IMG/VR virus record: IMGVR_UViG_3300024503_000485
Coordinates: 155,445 to 219,444 of that record
Direction: 5' to 3' (one strand)
Length of the DNA stretch: 64,000 nucleotides
The position numbers and the translations under genes were made by a program. The notes below the pieces were generated by a model that was given only the letters and a program-made list of their open reading frames with translations, was not told the DNA's origin and did not search any database. Shown here in pieces: positions 29,616 to 54,059 of this stretch; the first letter of the stretch is position 1; every line of letters starts with the position of its first letter.

Positions 29616-30626
29616 TCATACTGACAAAACTCTAGTTTCATCATAGTTGTATCTAGCATTTAATGGCTCCGCATAAGATTGTGCCTGCTCTGCAATTTTT
29701 TTCAAATCGTAGAGATGACAAAATTTCATTAATCTAATTCCAACTTGATTAACATTTTTGTTAGCAGTTGTAGCAGTATTAATTGTTTCTACAATAATTT
29801 TTTTAATTTCTTCTGGTTGATAAGACAAATCGATTAGTCGCCGATTTCTCTCATAGTCTTCCAAAACTCTGTGTTCTTTGCCTTCGTGGTCAGTCCATCT
29901 CTGAAGCATGAGATTGTTCCACGCAAATCCTTTGGTTTTACGATCTTCGAACGCTTCAGCAAGACCCACTTTTTTGCTTGTGCCTTTAGTACGCACACCT
30001 GGATACGCTGAGAAGACATTATCACTGGTATCACCACGCATACATTTTTCAAATAGTTGCCATTCTGGATTGGGTGCTGCTTTAGCTTCTTTAGTTTTTT
30101 TGTCAACAATGGGCTTACCTTTGTCATCAAAATACCCCTCATGTGTAATAGTCATTTCCATTACACCGTTATATTGTTTCACATTGGGTGCAATAAGTTG
30201 TGCAAAATCGGTATCTGTAGAAATAATAACATGGTTATCATCTGGATGATTTTGAATCCAGCCTGCAATTAAATCATCTGCTTCTAATTGCGGATGATGC
30301 ATAACGGTGCAATTTGTTTTATCTTTAATGAATTCTTTAAAGGTATCAAATGCTTCCCAAAATAGTGTATCTTCTTCTTGTTCTTTTTCGCTGTGTGCCG
30401 CACGAGCTTCTGCACGATTTCTTTTGTAGGGGGCGTAAAAATCTTTGCGCCAGCTACGACCTTCTAAGCAGAAAATAACGTGACTGCCGTTAAACTGCTG
30501 CCAGGCTTTACGAATTGAATTTAAAGTTATATGAAAAGCCATGCCAAGTTTAATATCAGCATCGCCGTTGATCACATGCCGTGCGCGAAAAAAAGTATTC
30601 GCAGTATCAACTAAAATGTAGGTCAT
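29616..30626 (-). CDS. rnh: 5'-3' exonuclease / flap endonuclease (T4 RNase H-like)
   Basis: ILVDTAN, SWRKDFYAPYKRNR, LEADDLIA, STDTDFAQL, GDTSDNV motifs. Confidence 0.9.
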   Translation of the reverse strand: MTYILVDTANTFFRARHVINGDADIKLGMAFHITLNSIRKAWQQFNGSHVIFCLEGRSWRKDFYAPYKRNRAEARAAHSEKEQEEDTLFWEAFDTFKEFIKDKTNCTVMHHPQLEADDLIAGWIQNHPDDNHVIISTDTDFAQLIAPNVKQYNGVMEMTITHEGYFDDKGKPIVDKKTKEAKAAPNPEWQLFEKCMRGDTSDNVFSAYPGVRTKGTSKKVGLAEAFEDRKTKGFAWNNLMLQRWTDHEGKEHRVLEDYERNRRLIDLSYQPEEIKKIIVETINTATTANKNVNQVGIRLMKFCHLYDLKKIAEQAQSYAEPLNARYNYDETRVLSV

Positions 30627-31060
30627 TTATTATTTCTTTTTACACTCTGTATGTCCAAAGTCCCTGTTTGTAAAGGACCACCGTAATCACCGTCAACAAC
30701 AACATTAGCACATAGTTCACGGAACCAACGATCGACAATTTCTTCGTCCAAATCACCGTCAGCACCATAACCTTCTTGCTTTAATTGTAGCACAAAATGT
30801 TCATTCCAGTCAAGTTCAAAAAAACCGTTACGAACATTGTCTTTGTTTATATGTGTATTTAACACGCCTACCCATGGTTCTTTCTTTCGAGTAGCACGAT
30901 CTTTTGGACTCAATTTAGCCAATTCTTGTTCTTGAGCAATTTCTTTTAGGCTATTTTCGGCTTCTTCTTTTAATTTGTTAGCCTGTTCAAGTGCTAATCT
31001 TGCTTCTTCAATGTTGGCTTCGATTTTATCTAAACCAAATAATTTTTTAATAAATTTCAT
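30623..31060 (-). CDS. Hypothetical protein
   Basis: Start MKFIKK is coupled to the queE stop (TAATG). Confidence 0.65.
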   Translation of the reverse strand: MKFIKKLFGLDKIEANIEEARLALEQANKLKEEAENSLKEIAQEQELAKLSPKDRATRKKEPWVGVLNTHINKDNVRNGFFELDWNEHFVLQLKQEGYGADGDLDEEIVDRWFRELCANVVVDGDYGGPLQTGTLDIQSVKRNNK

Positions 31061-31923
31061 TAAGTTCCCCACTCATTTTTAAATAATGGTACTTGTAGTC
31101 TATCACTATAGCGCAAGCCATTTTTCATCGCTAGTTCAGCGACCCTACGATTATTAAGAGTATAAACAGACTCCACCCCACCAACTGGCATAAGATATAC
31201 GGGTCCTGTAAACCCTTCGGCTCTGTAAATGTCTGCTGTTTCAATTGCTTCTTCTGCATCTTCTTCTGTCGCTACTACAAACTTAAGGTAAGTGTAGCCA
31301 ACCTCCTCATATTCACATACAATGTCTGGACGAATAGCTTCACTGCGTTCTTCACCGGAACAACTTAGTTTAGCACTTACACTAAATGTAATTTCTTTAT
31401 TATATTCTGGATGCGGCATCAACCATTCGATAGAAAGAAATTCTTTAAACTCTGGCGTTAGTTTTTGAGTACCATTAGTTTCAAAGGTAATCTCTTTTAA
31501 ACCAGCCATCTTAGGATGGCGCAACAGATCTGGATAAGCACGTTGCCAACCTAGTAACGGCTCGCCGCCTGTAATGACCAAGTGTTCGTCCTGCCACTGA
31601 TTAAATGGAAGGATTTCGCAGATACGTTCTGCAATACCATCTGTTGTAAGCATAGGACTAAGATCTTTAAAACGAGGATCCCAACTAGCGTAACTATCAC
31701 AGCCTGTGCTAACAAGCGGAAGTTCTTCGTATTTTGTATAAGGTTTTCTTTCGTGCTGGATAGCAATATCTTCAACTTCTGCACTTAGTTCGCCCTTTGG
31801 CATACCAAAGCCTGCACATTTAAAGTTACAACCAAATGTACGTAAGAAAACAGAAGGCACACCCATAAAGCGTCCTTCACCTTGAATGCTATAAAATAGC
31901 TCTGCGATTTTAATTTTGCTCAT
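31060..31923 (-). CDS. queE: 7-carboxy-7-deazaguanine synthase (radical SAM)
   Basis: ELFYSIQGEG..GVPSVFLRTFGCNFKC...GCDS, VITGGEP, FETNGT, SVSAKL, YLMP, RLQV signature. Confidence 0.88.
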   Translation of the reverse strand: MSKIKIAELFYSIQGEGRFMGVPSVFLRTFGCNFKCAGFGMPKGELSAEVEDIAIQHERKPYTKYEELPLVSTGCDSYASWDPRFKDLSPMLTTDGIAERICEILPFNQWQDEHLVITGGEPLLGWQRAYPDLLRHPKMAGLKEITFETNGTQKLTPEFKEFLSIEWLMPHPEYNKEITFSVSAKLSCSGEERSEAIRPDIVCEYEEVGYTYLKFVVATEEDAEEAIETADIYRAEGFTGPVYLMPVGGVESVYTLNNRRVAELAMKNGLRYSDRLQVPLFKNEWGT

Positions 31924-32101
31924 TGTTTATTATACCTTTATATATGAAATTTGTCAAGTCCTCTTTGACCAAACTCCATGTTCCGTCTTTATTATCAATC
32001 CAATTTATAGTATCGCCTTCTTTCCAACCCATCTCATTTAGTAAATCTTGAGGCAATGGTAATATTCCATCTTCGTTAATCGTTAATGTCCAACTTTTCA
32101 A
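31910..32101 (-). CDS. AbrB/MazE-like small DNA-binding protein
   Basis: DGILPLPQDLLNEMGWKEGDTINW pattern; TTG start. Confidence 0.6.
   Translation of the reverse strand: MKSWTLTINEDGILPLPQDLLNEMGWKEGDTINWIDNKDGTWSLVKEDLTNFIYKGIINNEQN
31929..31957 (-). promoter_or_regulatory. Consensus sigma70 promoter TTGACA-N17-TATAAT for queE (probably leaderless mRNA)
   Basis: -35 at 31952-31957, -10 at 31929-31934; only 5 nt separate the -10 from the ATG. Confidence 0.8.
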
Positions 32102-32594
32102 CTTTTACTCCGGATTTTTCAAGAAATTTAATTCCATCATCATTACGATAAGATTCGCGATAGAAAACACTATTAATCCCGCTTTGATAAATGAGTTTGG
32201 CACAATCAAGGCAAGGACTATGAGTAACAAACATAGTAGCATTCGCACCAGACTCAGTACTTTTAGCCAATTTGGCAATTGCATTTGTTTCTGCATGTAA
32301 TACCTCGGGTTTAGTTTTTAATCCAAAATGAACGTTACATCCTGCTTCTTCATTCCATTCTTCGTATGGATATTTAGAAAGAAATTCGTCGGGACTCAGC
32401 CATCCGCCTGCTCCGGTGTCATAATCTCTATATTCGCAGTTATTTTCCCAACCAGCCGGCATACCATTATAGCCAATACTGATAATTCTATCATCTTTGA
32501 CTACAATAGCACCAACATGTAATCTTTGTGCATGACTAAGCTCGGAGAATAATTGAGCGGCCTTCATGTATGCGCTCTTCATTTTTTCTTTCAT
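32076..32594 (-). CDS. dCMP deaminase
   Basis: VGAIVV..SIGYNG, HAETNAI, SPCLDC zinc motifs. Confidence 0.9.
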   Translation of the reverse strand: MKEKMKSAYMKAAQLFSELSHAQRLHVGAIVVKDDRIISIGYNGMPAGWENNCEYRDYDTGAGGWLSPDEFLSKYPYEEWNEEAGCNVHFGLKTKPEVLHAETNAIAKLAKSTESGANATMFVTHSPCLDCAKLIYQSGINSVFYRESYRNDDGIKFLEKSGVKVEKLDIND

Positions 32595-32787
32595 TTCTAT
32601 CCCTTTGTTCTTGCTTCCAATGATCGTATCTTAATTTTCTACACGCATCTCGAACTTCTGCAGGAATATCTGGATGCCATTCGGCCATGCCGCAGTCGTA
32701 TACTCGTTGTCGAGGAAAATCTAATAATACAAGAATTCCAAGGCCAACTATTATTATTAATGCTGCAACAATTTTATCAAATTTCAT
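32536..32787 (-). CDS. Small membrane-anchored protein
   Basis: N-terminal hydrophobic helix; YDCGMAEWHPDIP..C. Confidence 0.55.
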   Translation of the reverse strand: MKFDKIVAALIIIVGLGILVLLDFPRQRVYDCGMAEWHPDIPAEVRDACRKLRYDHWKQEQRDRNERKNEERIHEGRSIILRA

Positions 32788-32978
32788 AAAGCGTGACTTA
32801 CTAAAATTTTACACATTAGAGCATCGTGTTCATTTTTAAAAAAGAATTTCATACATTCTTCGCTTACTTCTGTTGTGTATCGACCGCCGGGTAGTCCAAA
32901 GTGTTCGAGAACACTAGCACAGGTTCCACTCCACCAAACATCACCTTGATTACGCCACGGTATAGTAATAACATTCAT
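32784..32978 (-). CDS. Hypothetical protein
   Basis: 64-aa ORF with ATGA overlaps on both sides. Confidence 0.6.
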   Translation of the reverse strand: MNVITIPWRNQGDVWWSGTCASVLEHFGLPGGRYTTEVSEECMKFFFKNEHDALMCKILVSHAL

Positions 32979-33169
32979 TCTGGTAATGGATTAAATCGTT
33001 GAAGAAAACTTTCAATGTAACAACTCCATTCCTGACATTCTGCTATATTAGGATTGCAGTTATCTAATCGATAATACACCCAAGTATGATCATCGATTTC
33101 GGTTACACTAATAACACGAAATTTTTTTCTATCATTATAGGTACCCCAAAGTGTTCCTGCTTTAACCAT
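32975..33169 (-). CDS. Hypothetical protein
   Basis: 64-aa ORF overlapping its neighbours. Confidence 0.6.
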   Translation of the reverse strand: MVKAGTLWGTYNDRKKFRVISVTEIDDHTWVYYRLDNCNPNIAECQEWSCYIESFLQRFNPLPE

Positions 33170-33749
33170 ATTCTTTGTTCCTTAAAAATTGTGACAGCAA
33201 TTCAAAAATAACTTTATTTCCTTTTTCAGTATAATGATTAATTAAACCTCTTTCCGAACTCCAAAGTCTACTAAAATCAAAATGATTTTTTTCTATTGAT
33301 AGTTTTTTTAAAATTTCAATATGAGATAAACTTATATAAGGAATTGTTATTATACTATTAATTTCTTTTCTTAACAACCGATAAACATCTAATTGATACT
33401 CGTCGTCGTAGTGATATTTGAACCATCCTTGAGCAGTTTTTAAATTACCATCAAACAAAGAAAAATTTTCGTTTATGTCGGTTAAAATTAAATCACAATC
33501 TTTATGAAATCCAGTTTTATGAATTGGATGATTTGGAGTATGTATTCTACTAGGACTGGTATGACTAACAATTATACAATCATACAGGTGTTGGTTAATA
33601 GTTTCAATTTGTTTATATATTTTGTATTCGCCTACGCCAGCTTGAGCTACATTTGTAACTTCGTGTTCTTTAGCCAATAAATCAACCCAACCAATAGAGG
33701 CATTTGGCCACTTAGCGGCAAAACTATCACCGGCAATTAAAATTCTCAT
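33162..33749 (-). CDS. SGNH/GDSL-like hydrolase or acyltransferase
   Basis: LIAGDSF, NVAQAGVG, C-terminal NHY. Confidence 0.7.
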   Translation of the reverse strand: MRILIAGDSFAAKWPNASIGWVDLLAKEHEVTNVAQAGVGEYKIYKQIETINQHLYDCIIVSHTSPSRIHTPNHPIHKTGFHKDCDLILTDINENFSLFDGNLKTAQGWFKYHYDDEYQLDVYRLLRKEINSIITIPYISLSHIEILKKLSIEKNHFDFSRLWSSERGLINHYTEKGNKVIFELLSQFLRNKEYG

Positions 33750-34564
33750 AGTGCTTTCAACCAGGGTAGATATTTAGTAGCAATGAGAGTGTGATAATCT
33801 TTATTATAATGTTCGTTGTCTTCGATAAAATATTTTGTATGGTCAATATTTTTATCTAAAAAGAATTTTTCAACGGTCTTAGGTGCTAATGTTGTAGCTT
33901 TTAATTGTCCGTAGTAGTTATAAACATCGGGAAATTTCAATCTTTCTGTAAAATTAAAAAGATATAATTTAGCATTGTTTTCAAAACAAATTCTATCCCA
34001 GGCAAAGATTTGTAAACCAAAATCTCTTTTTTCTAAAAAAGAGTTTAATTCAAAAAATAATTTAACCTGCATATAAGTATTTTTTCTTAGATCAGGTTCT
34101 AATAATCCTTTCTCAGCAGATAAATTCATACCGGGAAATTTTGAATAATCGTCGTATGTGGGTTTATTGAATAATTGAAGTTTGTCTTTAACTACCGTAT
34201 TGTCAACGTATCTAGAAATTAAAGAATTATCACTATCACATTTTAATTTAAAATGATCTACAGGAATAACATCGTCGGATAATTCATTATCAAATCCTAT
34301 TGTAAAACGATTTAAAGGTGCTACACATAGAAATACTTCATCAATGTCGTTATATTCTTCAAACATCGATTTTAACCAGTCTGTATACACACGATTGTTT
34401 ACACCTGCCATTGCATATATAGCCGCAGGTTTGTTTAGTTCGGACGAATAAATTTCTCCGTAATTATTTTCATTCCAGTAAGAAAAACTTCCTGGACCAA
34501 TTTTTCCAGGAATACTATGGTATCCACAAGTATGACTATCTCCAATAAACAACGATCTTGACAT
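33746..34564 (-). CDS. SGNH/GDSL-like hydrolase or acyltransferase
   Basis: FIGDSHT, YAMAGVNN, DNEHY (DxxH); TAATG-coupled start. Confidence 0.7.
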   Translation of the reverse strand: MSRSLFIGDSHTCGYHSIPGKIGPGSFSYWNENNYGEIYSSELNKPAAIYAMAGVNNRVYTDWLKSMFEEYNDIDEVFLCVAPLNRFTIGFDNELSDDVIPVDHFKLKCDSDNSLISRYVDNTVVKDKLQLFNKPTYDDYSKFPGMNLSAEKGLLEPDLRKNTYMQVKLFFELNSFLEKRDFGLQIFAWDRICFENNAKLYLFNFTERLKFPDVYNYYGQLKATTLAPKTVEKFFLDKNIDHTKYFIEDNEHYNKDYHTLIATKYLPWLKAL

Positions 34565-34956
34565 TACCACTTCCTATAATTACCTCGTTCTGGAATAACG
34601 TGTCTAACCCCACCAGTGGGATCTTCCATATCGCCTGTTCGTCTTGGAATTAAATGTACATGAGGCCACGGAACCGTTTGTCCTGCTGATTGGCCATAGT
34701 TAAGACCAATATTAAACCCATCCCATTCTCCGGTGCCTACACGTTTAATTCCATCTTTAACTGCATCTTCAAAACAATCCATTAGCACATCAATAGTATT
34801 GTATTTAGGCACAAAAAGAAGATGGCCATCAGTAACAGGATACTTATCTCTAAATACTCTAACATGATAGTCTTCCTCTACAAGTTCGGTCCACGGTGCT
34901 TTTGAATCTTCAATAAAATCAGGCTCCGACGGAAATACTTTATGTTCGTGTTTCAT
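34564..34956 (-). CDS. HIT family nucleotide hydrolase
   Basis: DKYPVTDGHLL, GFNIGLN.GQSAGQTVPWPHVHLIPR. Confidence 0.9.
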   Translation of the reverse strand: MKHEHKVFPSEPDFIEDSKAPWTELVEEDYHVRVFRDKYPVTDGHLLFVPKYNTIDVLMDCFEDAVKDGIKRVGTGEWDGFNIGLNYGQSAGQTVPWPHVHLIPRRTGDMEDPTGGVRHVIPERGNYRKW

Positions 34957-35540
34957 TTTGACCACCACTCTTCCCAAGGAAAATCAACCCATACATCCTC
35001 TTCTGCTTTGTTAATTTCCATGCCAACAAAATCCATTTTTACATTACACTTACTAGCAAGATTATCAACTAAAACAGCAAATTTAACATTTTCGTTCCAA
35101 ACTTCGTTCCACGAGTCGTCTCCTGGAAAACAACTAGAGCGCCAATCATCCATAATCCAATTAAAGGTAGCGCCACTATCGTTTATATCGTCTACAATTA
35201 AAATATTTTTGTAAGTAGCCCCGTCTTCTAACAAACCACTAGCTACATCTAAAATACTTCCAATGTCGTTAGCATCGTCAATTATACGATCCTTAGTTGG
35301 AGGACCAAGTGCATCTTCTGCCATCCACATATTGCTTTCTCCACCGCTGCCATCTCTTAAACTAACATTTAAAGTCCACATTGGTACATTAAGATAATGA
35401 CTCAACAATACAGCGGGAATAAGGCCACCGCGAGTTAGGCCAACAATATAATCTGGCTTCCAATATCCTGTTGCAATATTTCTTCCAATTTTTGAAACCA
35501 ACCCTGTCATTTCATGCTGGTTGATTATGAGCTTTTTCAT
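34953..35540 (-). CDS. Type I phosphoribosyltransferase (Gpt/Hpt-like)
   Basis: GLTRGGLIPA, ILIVDDINDSGAT PRPP-binding loop, WVDFPWE. Confidence 0.88.
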   Translation of the reverse strand: MKKLIINQHEMTGLVSKIGRNIATGYWKPDYIVGLTRGGLIPAVLLSHYLNVPMWTLNVSLRDGSGGESNMWMAEDALGPPTKDRIIDDANDIGSILDVASGLLEDGATYKNILIVDDINDSGATFNWIMDDWRSSCFPGDDSWNEVWNENVKFAVLVDNLASKCNVKMDFVGMEINKAEEDVWVDFPWEEWWSK

Positions 35541-35958
35541 ATCTCTCCTTTAGATACTCTTCATGTTGTATCCATTTACCGTTAACATCAAAACCCCAAT
35601 CGCGTTGTTTAGGACCAGGCATAAAAATAGTCCAGCACTCAACACCTGGTTCTAATTCAACACGATGAAAGCTATTAGCACTACAAGTTCTAAAATGACC
35701 AGGACCTCTCCAGAATCTTCCTTCTGGAGTAGTTTCCCAGTAACCACCTTTGAGAATTAGTGTAGCATAAGGCCAAGGATGATCGTGTAAATCGTCCGGA
35801 TCACCTTTTAAGAATTTGTGTAAAAAGATATTAAATGGAAAACGATCTCTATCTTTTAGAAAAAGATAGTAACGTTCTAAATATGGTTCGTTTACTTCTC
35901 GATCCATAACGATACGTTTACGACCCATACCTTCTAAAAGATTAAGAAACCATTTCAT
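35512..35958 (-). CDS. Cupin-fold protein
   Basis: HDHPW..LKGGYWE..HRVEL..WTIF; ATGA-coupled start MKWFLN. Confidence 0.7.
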   Translation of the reverse strand: MKWFLNLLEGMGRKRIVMDREVNEPYLERYYLFLKDRDRFPFNIFLHKFLKGDPDDLHDHPWPYATLILKGGYWETTPEGRFWRGPGHFRTCSANSFHRVELEPGVECWTIFMPGPKQRDWGFDVNGKWIQHEEYLKERYEKAHNQPA

Positions 35959-36170
35959 GTGCGATCCTTTAACCATGCGTCTACTTTTGCTTCTGCTTCT
36001 TCTTGTGTAACAGCATAAGCATAGATCCAAAAACAATCATCTTTACCTTTGATATCAAAAGGAACACTACCGTTAAACAGGATTCCTTCTTCTAACATAC
36101 GTTTTACTTCAAATTTCTTTAAATTTCTTGCACGATTAATTAAATCGTTAGCCATGTCTACTGAATTCAT
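35955..36170 (-). CDS. Hypothetical protein
   Basis: 71-aa ORF with ATGA overlaps. Confidence 0.6.
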   Translation of the reverse strand: MNSVDMANDLINRARNLKKFEVKRMLEEGILFNGSVPFDIKGKDDCFWIYAYAVTQEEAEAKVDAWLKDRT

Positions 36171-36913
36171 CTTGGGGCAAACTCCTGTTGTAGTTTAATG
36201 TTATCAAAGAATTCTTTCTTTGTACCAGGATCATCTTTAAACGCACCTTTGAGTACGGTGGTCTGTGTAAGACTAGAATGTGCCATAATACCACGATTCT
36301 CACAGCATCCGTGTACTGCTTGAATATAAACGCCTAGGTCTCTAGCTTCTGTGGCTTTTTCGATCTCCCGAGCAATGTCATTAGCAAGTTCCTCCTGGAG
36401 AGTACCACGTCGGGCACACCACTGGGCGATTCTTGTGTATTTGCTGAGTCCGATGAGCTTTTGGGCAGCAATAATACCAATATAAGCAACGCCAGTAACG
36501 GGTTGGTGATGATGGCTACACATACTGCGAAGCTCGCTACGAACAACCAACATACCTTCGTAACGGTCCTCCGAGTCATTTGGAAACGCTGTTGCTGATG
36601 GTTTTGGGTCATATCTTCCTGCCATTATTTCGTTAAAATACATCTTAGCAAGGCGACGTGCTGTGCCTTTACTATTAGGATCGTTTTCACGATCAATTAG
36701 CAACCGATCAAGCACTAGTTCAAATGCCTCTGTTGCTTCGTCAATTAGTCGTTCTTTATCGCCTTCGTGTAAAAAGTCGCTGATATTATCGCCAGCCCAA
36801 AAGCGTTTGCCCTCACGTTTCATTTTAAAACGAAGATGATCGCCTAAGTATGCTTCTTCGTAACCACCGTTCCCTGCCATTGCGTCCAGGGCTGTTTCTT
36901 TTTTATCTGTCAA
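36167..36913 (-). CDS. folE: GTP cyclohydrolase I
   Basis: TARRLAKMY, SMCSHHHQP, GLSKYTR, LQEEL, HGCCENRG; TTG start with GGAG RBS. Confidence 0.93.
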   Translation of the reverse strand: MTDKKETALDAMAGNGGYEEAYLGDHLRFKMKREGKRFWAGDNISDFLHEGDKERLIDEATEAFELVLDRLLIDRENDPNSKGTARRLAKMYFNEIMAGRYDPKPSATAFPNDSEDRYEGMLVVRSELRSMCSHHHQPVTGVAYIGIIAAQKLIGLSKYTRIAQWCARRGTLQEELANDIAREIEKATEARDLGVYIQAVHGCCENRGIMAHSSLTQTTVLKGAFKDDPGTKKEFFDNIKLQQEFAPR

Positions 36914-36952
36914 TTAAATTTCTCCGAGTTAATGTCGTGGATGACATATTAG

Positions 36953-38014
36953 TTATTTTAACATATCTAATAGGTTATCGCAACTAAAATAGTTTTCTTT
37001 TAGTTTTGTTACTTGTTTATTTAGGCGAGGTAGATAAGATTTATAATTTTCCATATAGTGAATAACTCGATCTACAACAGCACTTCTGTATTTTTTATAG
37101 CTGTCAAATGATTCTGTCCATTCGCTAGGATATTTGAAATCCTCCATTGACATTTCGCTGTAACTTAAACGATCTGGAACCATAGGTATTGCATCAACAA
37201 TTGCACCTTCATACCAACTAATACCTAGTGTTTCTTGCAGGTTAGCACTAAACACAAGTTTAGCTTCTCCTAAGAAATTATGATATTCGTTTTTGGTTAG
37301 TTGGCGTTCTTGACAAACAACAAATTCATACTGCGGTAACTGCTCTTTAAGATCATTAAAAATGTCAACTTGTTTTTCAGGAGCAATACGATGAGGAAAA
37401 AGGATTAGATCTTTTTTAGCCATTCCTTTATATTGCAATAAAGTATCTTCCATATACTCCATTGGCCAACCAGTACGAGTCATTTTATAATAATTTTCTG
37501 GTCCGTACATACCGCCAAACAAATTCTTATTAAACATTTCGATATGAAATTGAGTAGCAAAGTAGTTGTGGTCGAACGCATGAAAGAAACTTTTCTCAGC
37601 GTGTCTAACCCAGGGAGCATCGCCGATGAGTCTGCCTAGAAAGTCTTGAGGATCGTATGACCCAGCATGCCATAAGCCATGTGTGGTTACTGGAATGTTC
37701 AATAACTCACTCATGTACTTTAAATTTATGATACCAGGATGCCAAGCATCAGTAAACAAAAAGTGATCGCCGGGATGAACGGCTCCGTTACAAAATAAAC
37801 GCCCCATCTGCTCAACTTGGCTAGACTTATAGATATTAGTCCCGCCAAAATTAAGAAAGGCGCCAGGAGTAGTGGCACTAGGAATGTCCGTAGGACCAGA
37901 TATAATTTGAACATTGTGACCTGCCTTTCGAAGAAGTGAAGGTAAATGGGTTTTCCACTCGCCTGTATAGCGAGTTTCTACTGCTTCAAGGTCAACGAGG
38001 AAAACCCTTGCCAT
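36953..38014 (-). CDS. GT-B (GT4-like, retaining) glycosyltransferase within the 7-deazaguanine cluster
   Basis: FPHRIAPEK and FSANLQETLGISWYEG (E-x7-E) motifs; start reassigned to MARVFLV. Confidence 0.75.
   Translation of the reverse strand: MARVFLVDLEAVETRYTGEWKTHLPSLLRKAGHNVQIISGPTDIPSATTPGAFLNFGGTNIYKSSQVEQMGRLFCNGAVHPGDHFLFTDAWHPGIINLKYMSELLNIPVTTHGLWHAGSYDPQDFLGRLIGDAPWVRHAEKSFFHAFDHNYFATQFHIEMFNKNLFGGMYGPENYYKMTRTGWPMEYMEDTLLQYKGMAKKDLILFPHRIAPEKQVDIFNDLKEQLPQYEFVVCQERQLTKNEYHNFLGEAKLVFSANLQETLGISWYEGAIVDAIPMVPDRLSYSEMSMEDFKYPSEWTESFDSYKKYRSAVVDRVIHYMENYKSYLPRLNKQVTKLKENYFSCDNLLDMLK
36955..36983 (-). promoter_or_regulatory. Sigma70-type promoter TTGCGA-N17-TAAAAT upstream of folE
   Basis: Correct spacing; lies in the 3' end of the GT gene. 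Confidence 0.5.
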
Positions 38015-38015
38015 A

Positions 38016-38276
38016 TTAACGACCCCTGCGATCGTAATTTCGATTGTCGTAGTTACGACCTTCGAATCTTGGTTTATTTCCTTGGTAAGGTCGACGTGGT
38101 CGCTTACTTGCCAAGTATGCACCATAATTAGGTGCATCTTTACGATACAACTCCGCTGGATCAAAATTGCGAAGTTCGAAGCGACACCAGTCGTAGTATG
38201 CTTCTAGATCATCCCAAACTTTTACAACGTCCGGGCGGTTTTCAAAATAGGAATAATCCTTATAATTACGAGCCAT
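38016..38276 (-). CDS. Hypothetical protein with Arg-rich C-terminus
   Basis: 86-aa ORF, AAGGA RBS. Confidence 0.65.
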   Translation of the reverse strand: MARNYKDYSYFENRPDVVKVWDDLEAYYDWCRFELRNFDPAELYRKDAPNYGAYLASKRPRRPYQGNKPRFEGRNYDNRNYDRRGR

Positions 38277-38288
38277 TATAGCTTTCCT

Positions 38289-38678
38289 TTAGTACTTGAT
38301 GAAACTACCATTTTCTCCGTCTTCGGAGACCTCAATCCAAACCTCACGGTCGGGATACTTTTTGCTAATCATGTCATATAAATCATCTGACATCATTTCG
38401 CAACTTTTAAAATCTAAACTCAGTGTAGCATCTGCGTAGAGATTTTGCAACCAACGTTTAAATTGAATAAACTCAATATCGCGGTCATTGTGAGTAACAC
38501 CAATCCATACCTTAAAATGGAAGATATGTCGATGTGGATAGCCTAGGAAACTTACATCATATTCATCACCTGTTGCTAGGTTAGGATCTGTAAGTGCTGC
38601 GGGATATTTGTGCATACCTTCTTTTTGAAAGGTAACCCAAATCATTTTGTTAGGACGAATGTCTTGTTTGATAATCAT
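38289..38678 (-). CDS. QueD-like T-fold protein, DpdL-type (LxxxHRHxF)
   Basis: FLGYPHRHIFHF, DRDIEF, SCEM, VSEDGENG; lacks the canonical QueD CxxxHGH; ATGA-coupled start MIIKQ. Confidence 0.75.
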   Translation of the reverse strand: MIIKQDIRPNKMIWVTFQKEGMHKYPAALTDPNLATGDEYDVSFLGYPHRHIFHFKVWIGVTHNDRDIEFIQFKRWLQNLYADATLSLDFKSCEMMSDDLYDMISKKYPDREVWIEVSEDGENGSFIKY

Positions 38679-38890
38679 ATTTGCATCAAGCCGTCGCACA
38701 GCTCTTTAATTTCATCTCTGGTCATATTAAAGTTATAGATACTTGAAGTATCAACTTTACCTTGTTTATTTAGGCTTTCTTGCACAAAGTCTAAACTAAT
38801 AAGACCTTTTGGAGCAATACATTCGTTTGCTACAACCTTTAAACGAAAGCCGGGATTTTCATGTACAACAAATTCTTTTTTAACTCTCAT
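38675..38890 (-). CDS. Hypothetical protein
   Basis: 71-aa ORF with ATGA overlaps. Confidence 0.6.
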   Translation of the reverse strand: MRVKKEFVVHENPGFRLKVVANECIAPKGLISLDFVQESLNKQGKVDTSSIYNFNMTRDEIKELCDGLMQI

Positions 38891-39267
38891 CTTTGCAAAG
38901 CCTCCATCATAATAATTTTTGCTAAACGATCACCTAAATCTTCTGCTTCTGTAATAACATGCATAGTATTTTGATTACGATCTCTATTACGATCATAACT
39001 ACGAGTTTCTACAACGTATCCACCACTTGCTTTATAAATCTGTAGTCGCATACCTTCGGAAGATAGTTTATCTTCTTCAACATAGATACCACGATCTGCT
39101 TCGATATCGTCTTGATGGTCCATTAACCAGTTGCGAAAACGTTGTTTTAAAGTTAGTTTCATTTCTTTCTTTCTTGCCTTTTTAATTTTATTCAATCCGT
39201 AACCAGGTGTTCTTGCGATTGACTTTTGGCCAATGGCGTAGCCTGCTGATACTTGTCCAGTACTCAT
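38887..39267 (-). CDS. Hypothetical protein
   Basis: 126-aa ORF with ATGA overlaps. Confidence 0.6.
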   Translation of the reverse strand: MSTGQVSAGYAIGQKSIARTPGYGLNKIKKARKKEMKLTLKQRFRNWLMDHQDDIEADRGIYVEEDKLSSEGMRLQIYKASGGYVVETRSYDRNRDRNQNTMHVITEAEDLGDRLAKIIMMEALQR

Positions 39268-39797
39268 TTAATAATTTCATCCTTGCCATATTGATCCCAA
39301 TCTGTGAAGCGATCTCTTCCCAGAAGGTCCTGTAGGTTATGACACCATACCCCAGGATTAGTTGCTGAAAAATCTTTGTCGTCGATTTTAAGAGTGGCGT
39401 TATAACCTAGTTGATTAATATAAGGTAATTTTACACTGATCTGCGGAATAAATCTACGTTTTTCGGTAAGACCGCTTTCAAGCAATCCTTCCGTTTCGCT
39501 GACATCAAAATCAAGAGTACACCAGAAACCGTCTTCGGCGTCTAAGCATACATAGATCATATCTTCCCAAGGACGCCAGGTTTCAACATCATTGACGCCG
39601 TTAGTTTTAAAACTTTGGTTAGCACCAAAATAGATATGTTTGCAGTCGTTATTACGAGCAAGTTCCATAATAACATATGGATCATGAACGCCTACAACAA
39701 AAAGAGTTTTCATTCCAAAGGCAGGAGTCTTTTCAATTTCGACTCCTGTAAAGAAGGTGATGTTGTTTTCAACACCAGTGGAGTAATCACGTTTCAT
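39264..39797 (-). CDS. Hypothetical enzyme-like protein of the deazaguanine cluster
   Basis: 177 aa, globular; GVEIEKTP, HIYFGANQSF, KIDD..NPGVWCH. Confidence 0.65.
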   Translation of the reverse strand: MKRDYSTGVENNITFFTGVEIEKTPAFGMKTLFVVGVHDPYVIMELARNNDCKHIYFGANQSFKTNGVNDVETWRPWEDMIYVCLDAEDGFWCTLDFDVSETEGLLESGLTEKRRFIPQISVKLPYINQLGYNATLKIDDKDFSATNPGVWCHNLQDLLGRDRFTDWDQYGKDEIIK

Positions 39798-39952
39798 TTT
39801 TTAAAAAGATTTTTAATTGACGTAAGTAAATTATAATATCTTGCTTTGTAATTGTCAACAAGAATTTGGTTAACCACAGATTGATGAGGACATCTTCCTT
39901 GATTCCAAGTACAATTTGGTTGAACGTCTTCTTTACAATATGTACATTTCAT
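39794..39952 (-). CDS. Small Cys-rich (possible zinc-binding) protein, 52 aa, not in the ORF track
   Basis: MKCTYCKEDVQPNCTWNQGRCPHQSVVNQILVDNYKARYYNLLTSIKNLFKK; ATGA overlaps at both ends. Confidence 0.65.
   Translation of the reverse strand: MKCTYCKEDVQPNCTWNQGRCPHQSVVNQILVDNYKARYYNLLTSIKNLFKK
39830..39858 (-). promoter_or_regulatory. Consensus sigma70 promoter TTGACA-N17-TATAAT
   Basis: -35 at 39853-39858, -10 at 39830-39835; perfect match. Confidence 0.8.
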
Positions 39953-40131
39953 TCTTCTAGACCTGCTTGTTTAGCCTGCAATAAAACAATTTCATCTTTT
40001 AAAAATAATCTTTGTTTTTTTAATTCTTCTAGTCTTAAGTCTTCAAATAGCCCATTTTTTTCTAGCGTGTCGATTTGTTTATTCAACACTCGATGTGCTT
40101 CTTCTAAATGTTTAATTCTATTTTCGTACAT
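39949..40131 (-). CDS. DUF465/YdcH-like small coiled-coil protein
   Basis: HLEEAHRVLNKQI..LKKQRLFLKDEI; AAGGAG RBS. Confidence 0.65.
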   Translation of the reverse strand: MYENRIKHLEEAHRVLNKQIDTLEKNGLFEDLRLEELKKQRLFLKDEIVLLQAKQAGLEE

Positions 40132-40140
40132 AAAAACTCC

Positions 40141-41691
40141 TTATTCAACTTTAAGATTATCTAATGCTTCGTCTTCTCTATCATCAGTCCAAGAAGTTTC
40201 ATCTTCTGATTCTTCATAGAACAATGTATCTGCAATGTTAGTAACACCGCCACGTAGTCGAGCACCTTCTAAGTTCTGTAAGAAACCAAGTCGTTCAGCT
40301 TCTGCAATCATAGTAAATGCTTCATCTTTAGTTTTAAGAGCAAACAATTCTTCAACAAACTGATTAAAGTACAAAATATTACGAGGTACCCATTCCGAAC
40401 GTTCATCGCTCTTATCGTTGTCTTTTACTTTACGCCAGTGTCTCCAATCTGGTTTGTAACTAGCGTATTCAATATCTGCAAGATTGTTTGCACGTTGAAC
40501 AGCACGAATATGACATTCAACATTATGACCCATCATTAGAGCATAAGCAAAACTATCCCAACTAGTTTTACCTTCCTTGCCAATCTTGTTTAACATTCCT
40601 GGAGCATAGTGGCAGATATCCGCGACCGTAAGTCTCCTACCAAAATCGGACTCGAAAGGAAAAGGTATATCGTGCCGTCCGGCAAGACCCTTATTGTCCG
40701 GGGCTTTATCCATGATAACACTGAATCGCTTATTGGTATGTTGGGCGTTAGTATATACCAATCCGTGAGCTGTTGCGATGAAAGGTGAAGCGCAGTCAAA
40801 GGAAATTGTGAAGTTTTCATTTACGTGTTTTCTAATTTGACGTTGAATGCTTGTTAAGTAACAAGCCCAATCCAGCTGTGCGGTACCCAAGAAGTGCATC
40901 CAATCCTTGCCTTCTAGCATACCATCAAAACGCATAGTGATTAGTCTGCGTAGTGTAATAGGCATTTTGCACATATTAGCACCACCCATAGCCCAACCTT
41001 CTGCGGCTTTGTCTCCATACTTGTTTGTATCGGAATATTCTTTTACACCCTGGTACCACGCTTCTGCGTTTTCCCAGTTGCTACCTTGTAAAACATTTAA
41101 TAGCTTAGTGCCGCCTTCTTTGGCACCTAAACGATTTTGAATAAAGTATTCGTTATTAAAACGAGTCTTTTCTAAACAATCTTCAAACGATTTTAATCCT
41201 GTCTTTGGGCTGTGAATGTGATCACAAGCCCATGTCGGAACGTCTAGCATCATTGACCAATCAGCAGTTACGTCTAACCAAGTTAAAATCTTTTCGCGAG
41301 TTTTATTTGCTTCAGTACCTTCAAAGTTTTGCCAGTCAAACTTAATAACACCTTTACCGATCTGATAACCGCCTGAATCTCCTAAGATCATTGTCTTTGA
41401 ACGATCACGCTGTTGAATCATAGATTCTTGCGTCATAGACTTAGTAATGTCTAATTGAGCATGACCCGCTGAATACAAGGCAAATTTATAATAAAAATAT
41501 CCTTGTTCGGGATTTAAAAAATTCATACCTTCAATACCGCGATCAAAGTCTTTAGGAATGCGGTCATCTGGAATAAATTTTTCTAAACGTTGTTTTGCAA
41601 CGTATGTAGAATAGAAAGAACTAATAGCTGGTAAGTATACCGCATAGTCCTTTTGTAGTGGTGTTAAATCAACTGGTGGTTGTTTCTTCAT
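40141..41691 (-). CDS. dpdA: TGT-fold guanine transglycosylase, DpdA-type (DNA 7-deazaguanine insertion)
   Basis: GDSGGYQ, MLDVP, VLQG, GWAMGG, HFLG, SFDC catalytic/substrate motifs in order; no CxCxxC zinc site of tRNA Tgt; clustered with folE and queE. Confidence 0.8.
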   Translation of the reverse strand: MKKQPPVDLTPLQKDYAVYLPAISSFYSTYVAKQRLEKFIPDDRIPKDFDRGIEGMNFLNPEQGYFYYKFALYSAGHAQLDITKSMTQESMIQQRDRSKTMILGDSGGYQIGKGVIKFDWQNFEGTEANKTREKILTWLDVTADWSMMLDVPTWACDHIHSPKTGLKSFEDCLEKTRFNNEYFIQNRLGAKEGGTKLLNVLQGSNWENAEAWYQGVKEYSDTNKYGDKAAEGWAMGGANMCKMPITLRRLITMRFDGMLEGKDWMHFLGTAQLDWACYLTSIQRQIRKHVNENFTISFDCASPFIATAHGLVYTNAQHTNKRFSVIMDKAPDNKGLAGRHDIPFPFESDFGRRLTVADICHYAPGMLNKIGKEGKTSWDSFAYALMMGHNVECHIRAVQRANNLADIEYASYKPDWRHWRKVKDNDKSDERSEWVPRNILYFNQFVEELFALKTKDEAFTMIAEAERLGFLQNLEGARLRGGVTNIADTLFYEESEDETSWTDDREDEALDNLKVE

Positions 41692-45509: not shown

Positions 45510-45518
45510 TTTTTCTCC

Positions 45519-45538
45519 TTGCAATTTTTGGCTTGCAA
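45519..45538 (-). promoter_or_regulatory. Hairpin abutting the polymerase Shine-Dalgarno (possible autogenous operator)
   Basis: TTGCAA-GCCAAAAA-TTGCAA immediately 5' of GGAG. Confidence 0.5.
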
Positions 45539-47324: not shown

Positions 47325-47525
47325 TTATTTATTCTTTCCGCTTTTCATATTTGCACACCAGTGATACATTTTAGATTTCTCACCCGATGCATTTTTTGCA
47401 CGTTTGCGTAGATCAGTAACTGAACCAGAACAACTAGCCCCTGAACGTTTTACTCTTCCGGGGCGGCTTTTTCCTTTAACTTTTCCGTCAGCAAAGTTTT
47501 CTATAACAAACTCTTTAGCTCTCAT
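47325..47525 (-). CDS. Small basic internal-head protein candidate
   Basis: N-terminus MRAKEFVIE-N, resembling the T4 IPIII capsid-targeting leader. Confidence 0.6.
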   Translation of the reverse strand: MRAKEFVIENFADGKVKGKSRPGRVKRSGASCSGSVTDLRKRAKNASGEKSKMYHWCANMKSGKNK

Positions 47526-53311: not shown

Positions 53312-53658
53312 TAGTCTTCCTGTTTATAGTCGCCGTTCTCGATATGCTTTTCTTGTTCAGTAGCAATCATTTTTGCTAGTTCAACAATTTTGCTTTCAGG
53401 AAACTTTTCATTGGCATCTTCAATATCAAACATTTCACAATAATTTTCTAAACAACTTCTTAAAGGTTTAATGTAAATTGTGAAAGCCTTTGGATGTCCT
53501 GCATGTTTTTCGTGGCGCTTTACCGCAGGAAAGAAATATTTTGTTAATAATTCTGTATTATTATCAATATAAAATTTTAAATCGTCAATCCAATCAATGT
53601 CAGCTTGCTCGTCATCTTTTGGAGCTCCTATAGCCGACCACATTTCTTTTAATAACAT
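53311..53658 (-). CDS. Hypothetical protein (MLLKE leader)
   Basis: 115-aa ORF coupled by TAATG overlaps. Confidence 0.6.
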   Translation of the reverse strand: MLLKEMWSAIGAPKDDEQADIDWIDDLKFYIDNNTELLTKYFFPAVKRHEKHAGHPKAFTIYIKPLRSCLENYCEMFDIEDANEKFPESKIVELAKMIATEQEKHIENGDYKQED

Positions 53659-54059
53659 TATTTCTGCTCCGGTGGATTATATTCTACATGCTCTGCGGCA
53701 GAATTTAAATGATCATTGGCAAGGGTAATATAACTACTAACCCATCCTGGTAATTCATCACCTTCTCGGATACTATTAAAAAGAATCTTGGCGTTTTTTG
53801 CAATTTGAACTAATTCTGCTTTAGCCATGCTTGCTTCGTGATCTGTGGATTCTCTTATCCCTTTAGATCTAGCTTCTTTTTCTAAGTCTAATTTACGTTG
53901 CTGTACTGCTTTTGCAAGATCAGGCTCTTTCATAACAACAGGATCAGTTTCAAGATCGTGTAGGGCCTTCTTTTTAGCTTCGTAATCACCCTTAGGGTCT
54001 GCTGAATTTAATTCTGTTTCAAATAAAGAAACTTCAAGTTTAGTGATAATATCTTTCAT
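53658..54059 (-). CDS. Internal-head protein candidate
   Basis: Likely start MKDIITKLEVSLFE; IRE-S junction before DHEASMAKAEL..LPGWVSSYITLA; GATAAATA at 54085-54092. Confidence 0.55.
   Translation of the reverse strand: MKDIITKLEVSLFETELNSADPKGDYEAKKKALHDLETDPVVMKEPDLAKAVQQRKLDLEKEARSKGIRESTDHEASMAKAELVQIAKNAKILFNSIREGDELPGWVSSYITLANDHLNSAAEHVEYNPPEQK

What the first reader, a model, noticed from the sequence alone, without database searches (positions are those of the whole stretch)
31060..41691. 7-deazaguanine DNA-modification cluster lacking QueC but carrying a GT4 glycosyltransferase: candidate new hypermodified base
Seen: a co-oriented, tightly overlapping gene run holds a DpdA-type transglycosylase, a QueD-like T-fold protein, a GT-B glycosyltransferase (E-x7-E), FolE and QueE. 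No QueC, QueF or Gat-QueC/ArcS is present in the window. Established: FolE-QueD-QueE make CDG, QueC converts CDG to preQ0, and phage DpdA exchanges DNA guanine for a 7-deazaguanine as protection against restriction. Inference: the pathway may stop at CDG or its decarboxylated form, and the GT immediately upstream of folE may add a sugar. That would be a guanine counterpart of T4 glucosyl-hmC. I know of no characterised glycosylated 7-deazaguanine in phage DNA.
Basis: partly seen in the sequence, partly recalled or inferred. Interest (0 to 1): 0.88.

Follow-up and report, generated by a model that had tools for sequence, protein, structure and literature searches.

The report
Glycosyltransferase wired into 7-deazaguanine DNA-modification cluster
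A large freshwater phage carries the known gene set that replaces DNA guanine with 7-deazaguanine, plus a sugar-transferring enzyme found almost only beside such genes in phages and bacteria, which points to an undescribed sugar-bearing DNA base.

Summary
The gene run is real. FolE, QueE, a TGT-fold DpdA-family transglycosylase and a GT-B/GT4-like glycosyltransferase (GT) with an E-x7-E motif are all confirmed. The "QueD-like" protein is DpdL, the QueD paralogue with the LxxxHRHxF motif. DpdL marks the published QueC-less route to 2'-deoxy-7-deazaguanine (dDG; Hutinet/Cui 2023). So the missing QueC is already explained. The new part is the GT. In 121 of 131 loci that carry it, DpdL lies within about 3 kb, and the other 10 are cut at the contig edge. 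The GT sits next to three different DpdA subfamilies. It occurs in the cultured phages PA5oct, ACP17, Phosso, BUDD and BCSR5. In alphaproteobacterial chromosomes it forms minimal DpdA–(DpdL)–GT modules. A distant homologue in Xanthomonas phage PhiXhv-12 lies between Gat-QueC and sugar-tailoring genes. PA5oct DNA has a modified G of unknown structure. phiST makes plain dDG without this GT. No report of a glycosylated 7-deazaguanine in DNA was found. Caveats: the acceptor atom is unknown, no true QueD is in the window, and a divergent QueC-family gene lies about 7 kb beyond the window end. Verdict: a known system with a strongly linked, uncharacterised tailoring enzyme.

The parts
40141..41691 (-). 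DpdA-family DNA guanine transglycosylase (516 aa), a long DpdA3-related branch
   Evidence: The DSGGYQ motif is invariant (D105 S106 G107 G108 Q110). hhalign against phiST/ACP17/BUDD/BCSR5 DpdA3 gives 95.1%, E 3e-8. The top PDB hits of the AF2 model are TGTs: 1p0d 2e-8, 7ovo, 8omr. It is 41.6% identical to the PA5oct-like gene that lies next to the GT.
39264..39797 (-). Conserved 177-aa protein of unknown function that travels with the module
   Evidence: It was found by HMM in the window clade, in loci L096-L119, in ACP17 and in several MAG contigs, always between DpdA and DpdL/GT. No family or PDB match.
38887..39267 (-). Conserved 126-aa protein of unknown function
   Evidence: It co-occurs with the 177-aa protein across the window clade. 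No family hit.
38289..38699 (-). DpdL, the QueD paralogue proposed as 7-carboxy-7-deazaguanine decarboxylase. The true start is probably internal; gene callers give 129 aa.
   Evidence: The motif LGYPHRHIF equals LxxxHRHxF (definition in PMC10516641). tblastn identity to other DpdL: Phosso 72%, ACP17 55%, PA5oct 56%, phiST DpdL 33% with E 7e-8. Also phrog_17812.
36953..38014 (-). GT-B, GT4-like glycosyltransferase (353 aa), dedicated to 7-deazaguanine modules
   Evidence: AF2 pLDDT 96. PDB neighbours are BshA, MshA, PglA and glycogen synthase. E261-x7-E269, R209 and K214 are conserved. 40 of 62 homologues hit PF00534. DpdL is within about 3 kb in 121 of 131 GT loci.
36167..36913 (-). FolE, GTP cyclohydrolase I
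   Evidence: PF01227, 1e-38.
35512..35958 (-). Small 3-His cupin in the 'cysteine dioxygenase' phrog; role unknown
   Evidence: phrog_4786, 4e-39. Cupin structural neighbours. HDH...H motif. Conserved in the window clade only.
34953..35540 (-). Purine-type phosphoribosyltransferase
   Evidence: PF00156, 1.5e-10. Weak XPRT/HGPRT NCBIfam hits. Present in many GT loci, including PA5oct-like phages.
34564..34956 (-). HIT-family nucleotide hydrolase/transferase
   Evidence: PF01230, 8e-10. HVHLIPR motif. Conserved in the window clade.
33162..34570 (-). Two conserved proteins (195 and 274 aa) with an N-terminal GDS motif; possibly SGNH-type hydrolases
   Evidence: Motifs only: FIGDSH...DxxH and IAGDSF. 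No significant family or PDB hit. Membership of the module is uncertain.
31060..31923 (-). QueE-like radical-SAM 7-carboxy-7-deazaguanine synthase
   Evidence: phrog_2076, 1e-52. TIGR QueE models 1e-12 to 1e-10, below their cut-offs.

Best explanation
The window is the replication and nucleotide-metabolism region of a roughly 219-kb freshwater phage that is distantly related to the Pseudomonas jumbo phage PA5oct. It carries a DpdL-type 7-deazaguanine DNA-modification module.

Proposed pathway:
1. FolE, with a QueD encoded elsewhere or supplied by the host, and QueE make 7-carboxy-7-deazaguanine from GTP.
2. DpdL is proposed to decarboxylate it to 7-deazaguanine.
3. A DpdA-family transglycosylase swaps this base for guanine in phage DNA. 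This is the published dDG pathway.
4. On top of this, a GT4-like glycosyltransferase acts as a dedicated extra component of the module. It most likely uses an NDP-sugar to add a sugar to the 7-deazaguanine, either after insertion into DNA or on the precursor. The result would be a bulkier base that shields DNA from restriction. A HexNAc donor is possible, because PIG-L-type deacetylases sit beside the GT in two other lineages.

The purine PRTase may recycle the guanine that DpdA releases back to GMP and GTP. Alternatively it may make 7-deazapurine nucleotides.

Shown: the gene identities and folds, and the near-obligate genomic linkage of the GT to DpdL and DpdA. Inferred: the decarboxylation, the sugar transfer, the acceptor, and the PRTase role.
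For: Gene identities.

Published pathway: the QueC-less DpdA3+DpdL route gives dDG in phiST (PMC10516641) and in Vibrio phage VP1.

Linkage of the GT:
- DpdL is within about 3 kb in 121 of 131 GT loci. The 10 exceptions are truncated at the contig edge.
- This holds across GT clades that are only about 30-45% identical.
- The GT is adjacent to a DpdA gene in PA5oct-like phages, ACP17, BUDD and BCSR5.
- It is adjacent to a 9g-type DpdA1 in loci L121-L133.
- It is adjacent to a window-type DpdA in alphaproteobacterial chromosomes.
- A distant homologue lies between Gat-QueC, a PIG-L deacetylase and a Gfo/Idh/MocA oxidoreductase in PhiXhv-12.

Catalytic and donor-binding residues are conserved.

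PA5oct, which has the same DpdA|GT|DpdL arrangement, has a modified G of unknown structure and is attacked by nucleases that sense hypermodified DNA (PMC12191111).

Expressing only dpdL and dpdA of ACP17, which also has the GT, gave no dDG.
Against: No chemistry was measured.

- dDG has no hydroxyl or amine at C7, so the acceptor is unclear. It would need C-glycosylation, another atom, or a different intermediate.
- phiST, RHph_I1_18, Ahp1 and Bakedbeans have DpdL without the GT. phiST makes plain dDG, so the GT is not needed for dDG.
- The closest structural relatives of the GT (BshA, MshA, AmGGT) act on small molecules, not DNA.
- The GTs are acidic, with pI 5.4-6.0.
- No true QueD is in the window.
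- A divergent QueC-family gene lies about 7 kb past the window end, so the end product could differ from dDG.
Confidence: 0.5

Rival explanations
1. The DNA base is plain dDG, as in phiST. The GT glycosylates a small-molecule intermediate or by-product rather than DNA. The target could be a pterin, or a free 7-deazapurine base or nucleotide. This would parallel pteridine glycosyltransferases, or the BshA/MshA plus deacetylase logic of low-molecular-weight thiol synthesis.
For: - The top structural relatives are small-molecule GT4 enzymes: BshA, MshA and AmGGT.
- PIG-L/BshB-like deacetylases sit next to the GT in BCSR5 and PhiXhv-12.
- FolE and T-fold enzymes handle pterins.
- The GTs are acidic.
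Against: - The most constant neighbour of the GT is the DNA transglycosylase. This includes minimal bacterial DpdA-GT modules with no FolE or QueE.
- PA5oct DNA behaves as hypermodified.
Confidence: 0.2
2. The GT is an accessory factor that helps DpdA work, for example by driving exchange to completion or acting as a scaffold. In this case no novel base remains in the mature DNA.
For: - The GT and DpdA genes are adjacent or overlapping in many lineages.
- ACP17 dpdA and dpdL alone gave no dDG in E. coli.
Against: Residues typical of an active NDP-sugar transferase are invariant or nearly so: E261, E269, R209, K214 and H116. A pure scaffold would not need them.
Confidence: 0.1
3. The GT has nothing to do with 7-deazaguanine. 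It might glycosylate hmC-type bases, phage proteins or the host envelope, and it lies in the cluster by chance of early-gene organisation.
For: Phage genomes often carry GT4 genes for other purposes, and BFVD holds many unrelated viral GT4 proteins. A dCMP deaminase lies in the same run.
Against: - Near-100% linkage to DpdL and DpdA across unrelated genome backbones and in bacterial islands.
- No dCMP or dUMP hydroxymethylase was found in the window.
- The model shows no resemblance to T4 AGT or BGT among the top PDB hits.
Confidence: 0.05
4. The end product is an amide-type derivative rather than dDG. It would be dADG-like, or a sugar-amide made via the divergent QueC-family PP-loop protein encoded beyond the window. 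The GT would supply or modify the sugar part.
For: - A QueC-family gene is in the same genome (PF06508, 28.2 bits against a cut-off of 22; SGGLDS and CxxCxxC motifs).
- PAPS-reductase-like PP-loop genes lie inside the BUDD and BCSR5 clusters.
- Campylobacter phages with DpdA3 make dADG using a QueC variant.
Against: - The QueC-like gene lies among baseplate-like genes, not in the cluster.
- It has no homologue in PA5oct-like phages, ACP17, Phosso, BUDD or BCSR5.
- It shows no detectable similarity to the BCSR5 PP-loop protein.
Confidence: 0.1

Closest known systems
dDG pathway of Cellulophaga phage phiST and Vibrio phage VP1 (FolE-QueD-QueE-DpdL-DpdA3; Cui/Hutinet et al. 2023, PMC10516641)
   Same: FolE, QueE, a DpdL with the LxxxHRHxF motif and a DpdA3-related transglycosylase. 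No canonical QueC in the cluster. The cluster lies next to the DNA polymerase.
   Different: phiST has no GT of this family, no PRTase and no HIT. Here the DpdA is twice as long (516 against 259 aa) and is linked to DpdA3 only at profile level. QueD is not in the window.
Pseudomonas jumbo phage PA5oct and its relatives (Wroclawvirus)
   Same: Syntenic module: PolB-clamp-DpdA-GT-DpdL-...-PRTase-QueE-...-RNase H. Identities to the window proteins are 42-56%. Its DNA has a modified G (PMC12191111).
   Different: The chemical identity of the PA5oct base is not known. PA5oct has an SDR 'epimerase' fragment where the window has a cupin. FolE and QueD lie elsewhere in its genome.
T4 glucosyl-hydroxymethylcytosine (alpha/beta-glucosyltransferases)
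   Same: A nucleotide-sugar-dependent GT-B enzyme encoded beside base-modification genes. Presumed anti-restriction role.
   Different: A different GT family: GT4-like, against GT63/GT72, which are not among the top PDB matches. The base is a purine, not a pyrimidine. No hydroxymethyl acceptor is evident.
Glycosylated queuosine in eukaryotic tRNA (mannosyl-Q and galactosyl-Q; QTMAN is a GT4 enzyme) - from own knowledge
   Same: A GT4-type enzyme puts a sugar on a 7-deazaguanine derivative in a nucleic acid. A QTMAN cluster appears among the structural neighbours (TM 0.74).
   Different: There the acceptor is the cyclopentenediol of queuosine in tRNA. No PF12038 hit was found, and generic GT4 enzymes are closer (TM 0.80). 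No specific relationship is shown.
Bacterial Dpd system (dpdA-K; dPreQ0/dADG modification with restriction)
   Same: A DpdA-family enzyme modifies DNA with a 7-deazaguanine. In Magnetospirillum the GT-DpdL-DpdA-QueD block sits beside a nuclease-domain protein and a HEPN protein in the chromosome.
   Different: No DpdB or DpdC was recognised. The DpdA subfamily is different, and a GT and DpdL are present.
BshA/BshB and MshA/MshB (GT4 GlcNAc transferase plus PIG-L deacetylase)
   Same: These are the best structural matches to the GT. A PIG-L-family deacetylase lies next to the GT homologue in PhiXhv-12 and, weakly, in BCSR5.
   Different: Those pathways make small thiols. No deacetylase was recognised in the window itself.

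Membership tests
DpdL (proposed CDG decarboxylase, QueD paralogue) | Signature LxxxHRHxF replacing the QueD motif CxxxHGH | tested here: met
   The window protein has L-GYP-H-R-H-I-F. True QueDs in the same alignment have C...HG[HY]. The definition is in PMC10516641.
DpdL (proposed CDG decarboxylase, QueD paralogue) | Sequence homology to phiST CGPG_00067/gp040 and ACP17 DpdL | tested here: met
   tblastn: ACP17 55.5% (6e-36), phiST 32.8% (7e-8). The HMM built from 7 DpdL sequences recovers all of them.
DpdL (proposed CDG decarboxylase, QueD paralogue) | Context: DpdA, FolE and QueE present, QueC absent | tested here: met
   Met for the cluster and the window. Caveat: a divergent QueC-family gene lies about 7 kb beyond the window.
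DpdL (proposed CDG decarboxylase, QueD paralogue) | Decarboxylation of CDG to 7-deazaguanine | not testable with these tools
   This activity is also unproven in the literature; heterologous expression failed.
DpdA / tRNA-guanine transglycosylase superfamily | TGT TIM-barrel fold | tested here: met
   The AF2 model has pLDDT 82.9. The only PDB hits with E<1e-3 are TGTs: 1p0d 2.2e-8, 7ovo 3.1e-6, 8omr 1.3e-4. TM scores are modest (0.38-0.54).
DpdA / tRNA-guanine transglycosylase superfamily | Conserved D-S-G-G-x-Q active-site motif | tested here: met
   D105, S106, G107, G108 and Q110 are invariant in 18 homologues. They align to the DSGG of the DpdA3 set.
DpdA3 subfamily (Hutinet 2023) | Sequence relationship to phiST CGPG_00065 and the ACP17 DpdA | tested here: inconclusive
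   hhalign gives 95.1%, E 3e-8 over 238 columns with shallow profiles. No pairwise tblastn hit. The DpdA3 HMM misses the window protein but hits the PA5oct-like homologue. It is either a divergent branch or a sister subfamily.
DpdA / tRNA-guanine transglycosylase superfamily | Exchange of guanine in DNA for a 7-deazaguanine | not testable with these tools
   Needs biochemistry or LC-MS.
GT-B retaining glycosyltransferases of the GT4 type | Two Rossmann-like domains (GT-B fold) | tested here: met
   AF2 pLDDT 96, pTM 0.93. 177 PDB hits with E<=1e-3, led by glycogen synthase, BshA, BA1558 (GT4), PglA and MshA.
GT-B retaining glycosyltransferases of the GT4 type | E-x7-E motif and basic residues for the donor diphosphate in the C-terminal domain | tested here: met
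   E269 is invariant. E261, R209 and K214 are conserved in at least 90% of 62 homologues.
GT-B retaining glycosyltransferases of the GT4 type | Match to Pfam Glycos_transf_1 (PF00534) | tested here: inconclusive
   The window protein itself has no hit. 40 of 62 family members hit it, best E 1.3e-8. The profile matches PDB entry 8xsg, a glucosyltransferase, at 3.5e-6.
T4-type DNA glucosyltransferases acting on hydroxymethyl-pyrimidines | Structural kinship with T4 AGT/BGT, and a co-encoded pyrimidine hydroxymethylase | tested here: not met
   Neither enzyme is among the top 50 PDB matches. No thymidylate-synthase-like hydroxymethylase was found among the window ORFs scanned.
Canonical preQ0 pathway (FolE-QueD-QueE-QueC) | QueC (PF06508) and QueD (PF01242) in the cluster | tested here: not met
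   No QueC or QueD in the window by Pfam, HMM or phmmer. Only a divergent QueC-family gene lies outside it.

The most novel reading that the evidence does not exclude
This GT family makes a glycosylated 7-deazaguanine, a DNA base not yet described. It could be a C- or N-linked hexose or hexosamine on dDG or a related derivative. The base would be present in a very abundant group of freshwater and marine phages and in cultured phages (PA5oct, Paride, ACP17, Phosso, BUDD, BCSR5). The same DpdA-(DpdL)-GT module would also serve as a self-DNA modification (and perhaps restriction) island in alphaproteobacterial chromosomes.
Probability: 0.45. Interest if true: 0.9.

Novelty: new variant of a known kind. 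Interest (0 to 1): 0.74.

Why it matters
[quoted passage not shown] A sugar-bearing purine would be a new chemical class of natural DNA base.

- It would be the purine counterpart of glucosyl-hmC.
- It bears on how phages evade restriction, CRISPR, DNA glycosylases and modification-dependent nucleases.
- It could supply new DNA-modifying enzymes as tools.

The result is directly testable:
- Several cultured phages carry the module.
- One of them, PA5oct, already has an unexplained modified G.
- A published attempt to rebuild dDG from ACP17 dpdA and dpdL failed, and the GT lies between those two genes.

The family is large: 1,111 representative clusters at 50% identity. Whatever it makes is common in nature.

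Tried and rejected
- Single-sequence searches of the DpdA, the GT and DpdL against Pfam, NCBIfam and PDB sequences gave nothing. Profiles and structure prediction were needed.
- Megablast of the cluster against isolated phages found no match.
- The search for related loci with a very diverse GT alignment failed because it had no conserved stretch. P0215 gave no viral loci.
- I tried to find the genome's QueD by searching viral contigs with a related QueD. The search was swamped by more than 600 close relatives from another clade, and the window's contig was not among the 80 kept. About 146 kb of the roughly 219-kb genome therefore remains unread.
- A specific link to tRNA-queuosine mannosyltransferase was rejected. 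It is only a generic GT4 neighbour.
- A link to T4 glucosyltransferases was rejected.
- The 177-, 274- and 195-aa conserved proteins could not be assigned. The weak AEP-primase resemblance of the 177-aa protein is at chance level.
- The window cupin and the PA5oct 'epimerase' protein at the same position are not homologous. The latter is an SDR fragment.
- pI values do not discriminate DNA-binding from small-molecule GTs.
- Laying contigs from RNA libraries shows that the cluster sequence is present in river metatranscriptome libraries. This does not prove transcription.
- The QueC-like protein beyond the window has no detectable similarity to the PP-loop protein in the BCSR5 cluster (BUDD not compared) and no homologue in the other GT-carrying isolates.

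Full report
**What is in the window**

All genes of the finding lie on the minus strand, in a run from RNase H (29616-30626) to the family-B DNA polymerase (42840-45524). Most junctions overlap by 1-29 nt, and the largest gap is 39 nt.
- FolE (36167-36913) is unambiguous: PF01227, 1e-38.
- QueE (31060-31923) matches the phage QueE family phrog_2076 at 1e-52. It matches several TIGRFAM QueE models only weakly.
- The run also holds a dCMP deaminase, a HIT protein, a purine-type phosphoribosyltransferase and a small cupin.

The window has no close DNA relative among isolated phages. The cluster DNA is near-identical (share of sampled words 0.86-0.92) in many river metagenome runs. The GT locus lies in a 219,444-bp IMG/VR contig. 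Assuming colinearity, the window is the last 64 kb of that contig. The exact DpdA protein occurs on 31 contigs of up to 223 kb.

**The transglycosylase**

The 516-aa protein (40141-41691) has no hit in Pfam, PHROGs, NCBIfam or PDB sequences. Three lines of evidence place it in the TGT/DpdA superfamily:
- It carries an invariant D-S-G-G-Y-Q motif.
- Its family profile aligns to a profile of DpdA3-type proteins (phiST gp042, ACP17, BUDD, BCSR5) with 95.1% probability and E 3e-8 over 238 columns.
- Its AlphaFold model (pLDDT 82.9) finds tRNA-guanine transglycosylases as the only PDB matches with E<1e-3.

I file it as DpdA3-related. Strict DpdA3 membership is inconclusive.

**The "QueD-like" gene is DpdL**

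The 136-aa ORF (38289-38699) carries LGYPHRHIF. This is the LxxxHRHxF signature that Cui, Hutinet et al. use to separate DpdL from QueD, whose motif is CxxxHGH. The protein is homologous to the DpdL of phiST and ACP17.

That paper shows that phages with DpdA3, FolE, QueD, QueE and DpdL but no QueC carry 2'-deoxy-7-deazaguanine. phiST has it in place of all G. Vibrio phage VP1 is a second case.

No true QueD is in the window. My QueD HMM finds QueD in many related loci but not here. In PA5oct, QueD is likewise far from QueE.

No QueC, Gat-QueC, QueF or ArcS is detectable in the window. However, a contig identical to window 52,482-64,000 extends the genome by 9 kb.
- About 7 kb past the window end it encodes a 197-aa divergent QueC-family protein. 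It has an SGGLDS PP-loop and a C-terminal CGRCDTC. PF06508 scores 28.2 bits against a cut-off of 22.
- The gene lies among baseplate-like genes.
- It has no homologue in the other phages that carry the GT.

I treat it as a caveat, not as part of the module.

**The glycosyltransferase**

The real gene is 36953-38014 (353 aa), according to gene callers and homologues.
- Its AlphaFold model is excellent: pLDDT 96, pTM 0.93.
- It is a GT-B fold closest to retaining GT4/GT5 enzymes: glycogen synthase, BshA, BA1558, PglA and MshA.
- In a 62-sequence family alignment E269 is invariant. E261 (which gives E-x7-E), R209, K214 and H116 are nearly so.
- 40 of 62 members hit PF00534.
- The profile matches a solved glucosyltransferase, 8xsg/AmGGT.
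- It shows no special likeness to T4 glucosyltransferases or to the queuosine mannosyltransferase.
- The family is large: 1,111 representatives at 50% identity with E<=1e-3.

Cultured phages:
- PA5oct-like phages: DpdA-like, GT and DpdL are consecutive genes, followed by PRTase and QueE, between PolB/clamp and RNase H as in the window.
- ACP17: QueD-FolE-[177-aa homologue]-DpdA3-GT-DpdL-QueE.
- BUDD: FolE-...-GT-DpdA3-DpdL-QueE.
- BCSR5: QueD-DpdL-...-GT-DpdA3-...-QueE-FolE.
- Phosso: DpdL-GT-...-FolE-...-QueE.

Metagenomic loci: I collected further loci using representatives of several GT clades. I scanned all of them with HMMs built from the isolates.
- 121 of 131 GT loci have DpdL within about 3 kb.
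- In the other 10 the GT starts within 282 nt of the contig edge.
- In one clade (L121-L133) the gene right after the GT is a 9g-type DpdA1.

So the GT sits beside three different DpdA subfamilies.

Cellular genomes: the GT is next to a window-type DpdA in Methylobacterium, Magnetospirillum, Pelagibacterium, Ochrobactrum and others. FolE and QueE are usually absent there, and DpdL sometimes is.
- In Magnetospirillum aberrantis the block GT-DpdL-DpdA-QueD follows a CoiA-nuclease-domain protein and a HEPN protein.
- In Pelagibacterium the block is DpdA-[YhhQ/Vut_1-like, sub-threshold]-GT, next to a resolvase.

A more distant homologue (HMM 1e-34) in Xanthomonas phage PhiXhv-12 lies between Gat-QueC, a PIG-L deacetylase and a Gfo/Idh/MocA oxidoreductase.

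The converse does not hold. phiST, RHph_I1_18, Ahp1 and Bakedbeans have DpdL without the GT.

**Interpretation**

The GT is a dedicated but optional component of 7-deazaguanine DNA-modification modules.

Points in favour of a sugar on the base:
- The catalytic residues are intact.
- Sugar-tailoring neighbours occur in other lineages: PIG-L deacetylases, an SDR fragment in PA5oct-like phages, and an oxidoreductase.
- The GT is adjacent to the DNA transglycosylase even in minimal modules.
[quoted passage not shown] It is attacked by END nucleases that sense hypermodified bases. Its base has not been identified.
- Expression of ACP17 dpdL and dpdA without the intervening GT gave no dDG.

Points against:
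- Nothing was measured.
- dDG offers no obvious acceptor. The electron-rich pyrrole carbon would need C-glycosylation, or the true acceptor is another intermediate.
- The nearest structural relatives act on small molecules.

I therefore give about 0.5 to a glycosylated 7-deazaguanine in DNA, about 0.2 to a small-molecule acceptor, and about 0.1 to a helper role.

The PRTase may recycle the guanine released by DpdA into GMP and GTP. Alternatively it may make 7-deazapurine nucleotides, as PRTases do in tubercidin and toyocamycin biosynthesis (own knowledge). The roles of the HIT protein, the cupin, and the 177-, 126-, 195- and 274-aa proteins are unassigned.

**Novelty**

Literature searches found no glycosylated 7-deazaguanine in DNA, and no follow-up on DpdL, DpdA3 or the PA5oct base. 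Hutinet 2023 does not mention a glycosyltransferase. The core pathway is already known. The GT link is a new variant that can be tested at once in cultured phages.

Noticed in passing
L253:18563-19156 (+), about 7 kb beyond the window end (about window coordinate 71,044-71,637 if extended): A 197-aa divergent QueC-family PP-loop protein (SGGLDS, C-terminal CGRCDTC; PF06508 28.2 bits). It lies in the same genome beside baseplate-like genes and is preceded by an overlapping 156-aa unknown ORF. It is not conserved in the other phages that carry the GT.
   Followed up: partly
L246:6330-12059 (Magnetospirillum aberrantis SpK chromosome contig); also L233-L249: A chromosomal block: CoiA-nuclease-domain protein, GT, DpdL, window-type DpdA and QueD, next to a HEPN protein. 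It looks like a Dpd-like DNA modification (and perhaps restriction) island in alphaproteobacteria, not a prophage.
   Followed up: partly
L228:3036-9029 (Pelagibacterium mangrovi): A minimal module beside a serine recombinase: DpdA, a YhhQ/Vut_1-like membrane protein (sub-threshold) and the GT. It has no DpdL, FolE or QueE.
   Followed up: partly
L218:3328-11755 (Xanthomonas phage PhiXhv-12; the same in PhiXhv-15/16, Ep026, Ep032): The gene annotated 'GlmS' is really Gat-QueC (PF06508, 2e-49). It is followed by a PIG-L deacetylase, a distant homologue of the GT and a Gfo/Idh/MocA oxidoreductase, with a GNAT protein upstream. This is an unrecognised 7-deazaguanine-plus-sugar cluster in these jumbo phages.
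   Followed up: partly
L215:9212-10363 (Vibrio phage Bakedbeans gp176): DpdL is fused to the C-terminus of an unassigned ~270-aa N-terminal domain. No GT or QueE was detected within 10 kb.
   Followed up: no
window 55147-58334 (-): The phage encodes a ClpB-like double-AAA+ chaperone (770 aa) directly followed by a full DnaJ (291 aa).
   Followed up: no
window 47522-48691 (-): A 389-aa protein combines a 5'-nucleotidase (NT5C) domain with a glycoside hydrolase family 19 domain, according to the precomputed Pfam hits. A second weak GH19-like ORF is at 60454-61089.
   Followed up: no
L253:12042-12856 (-), about 0.5-1.3 kb beyond the window end: A cytidylyltransferase-like protein (PF01467, 1e-17) lies next to a MazG-like PRA-PH pyrophosphatase (2e-7). 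phiST has a MazG next to DpdL. PAC2 and BUDD also carry CTP_transf-like genes near their clusters. This is a possible link to nucleotide or NDP-sugar supply.
   Followed up: no
window 33162-34570 (-): Two adjacent conserved proteins start with GDS-type motifs (FIGDSH with a distal DxxH; IAGDSF). This suggests SGNH hydrolases, but no database match is significant.
   Followed up: partly
window 35700-41691: Contigs assembled from three river metatranscriptome libraries reproduce the cluster with no differences. DNA carry-over cannot be excluded, so transcription is not shown.
   Followed up: partly
L001:5605-10831 (Pseudomonas phage PAC2): The PolB gene of the PA5oct-like relative is split by a Hef-like homing endonuclease gene. 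The window PolB is intact.
   Followed up: no
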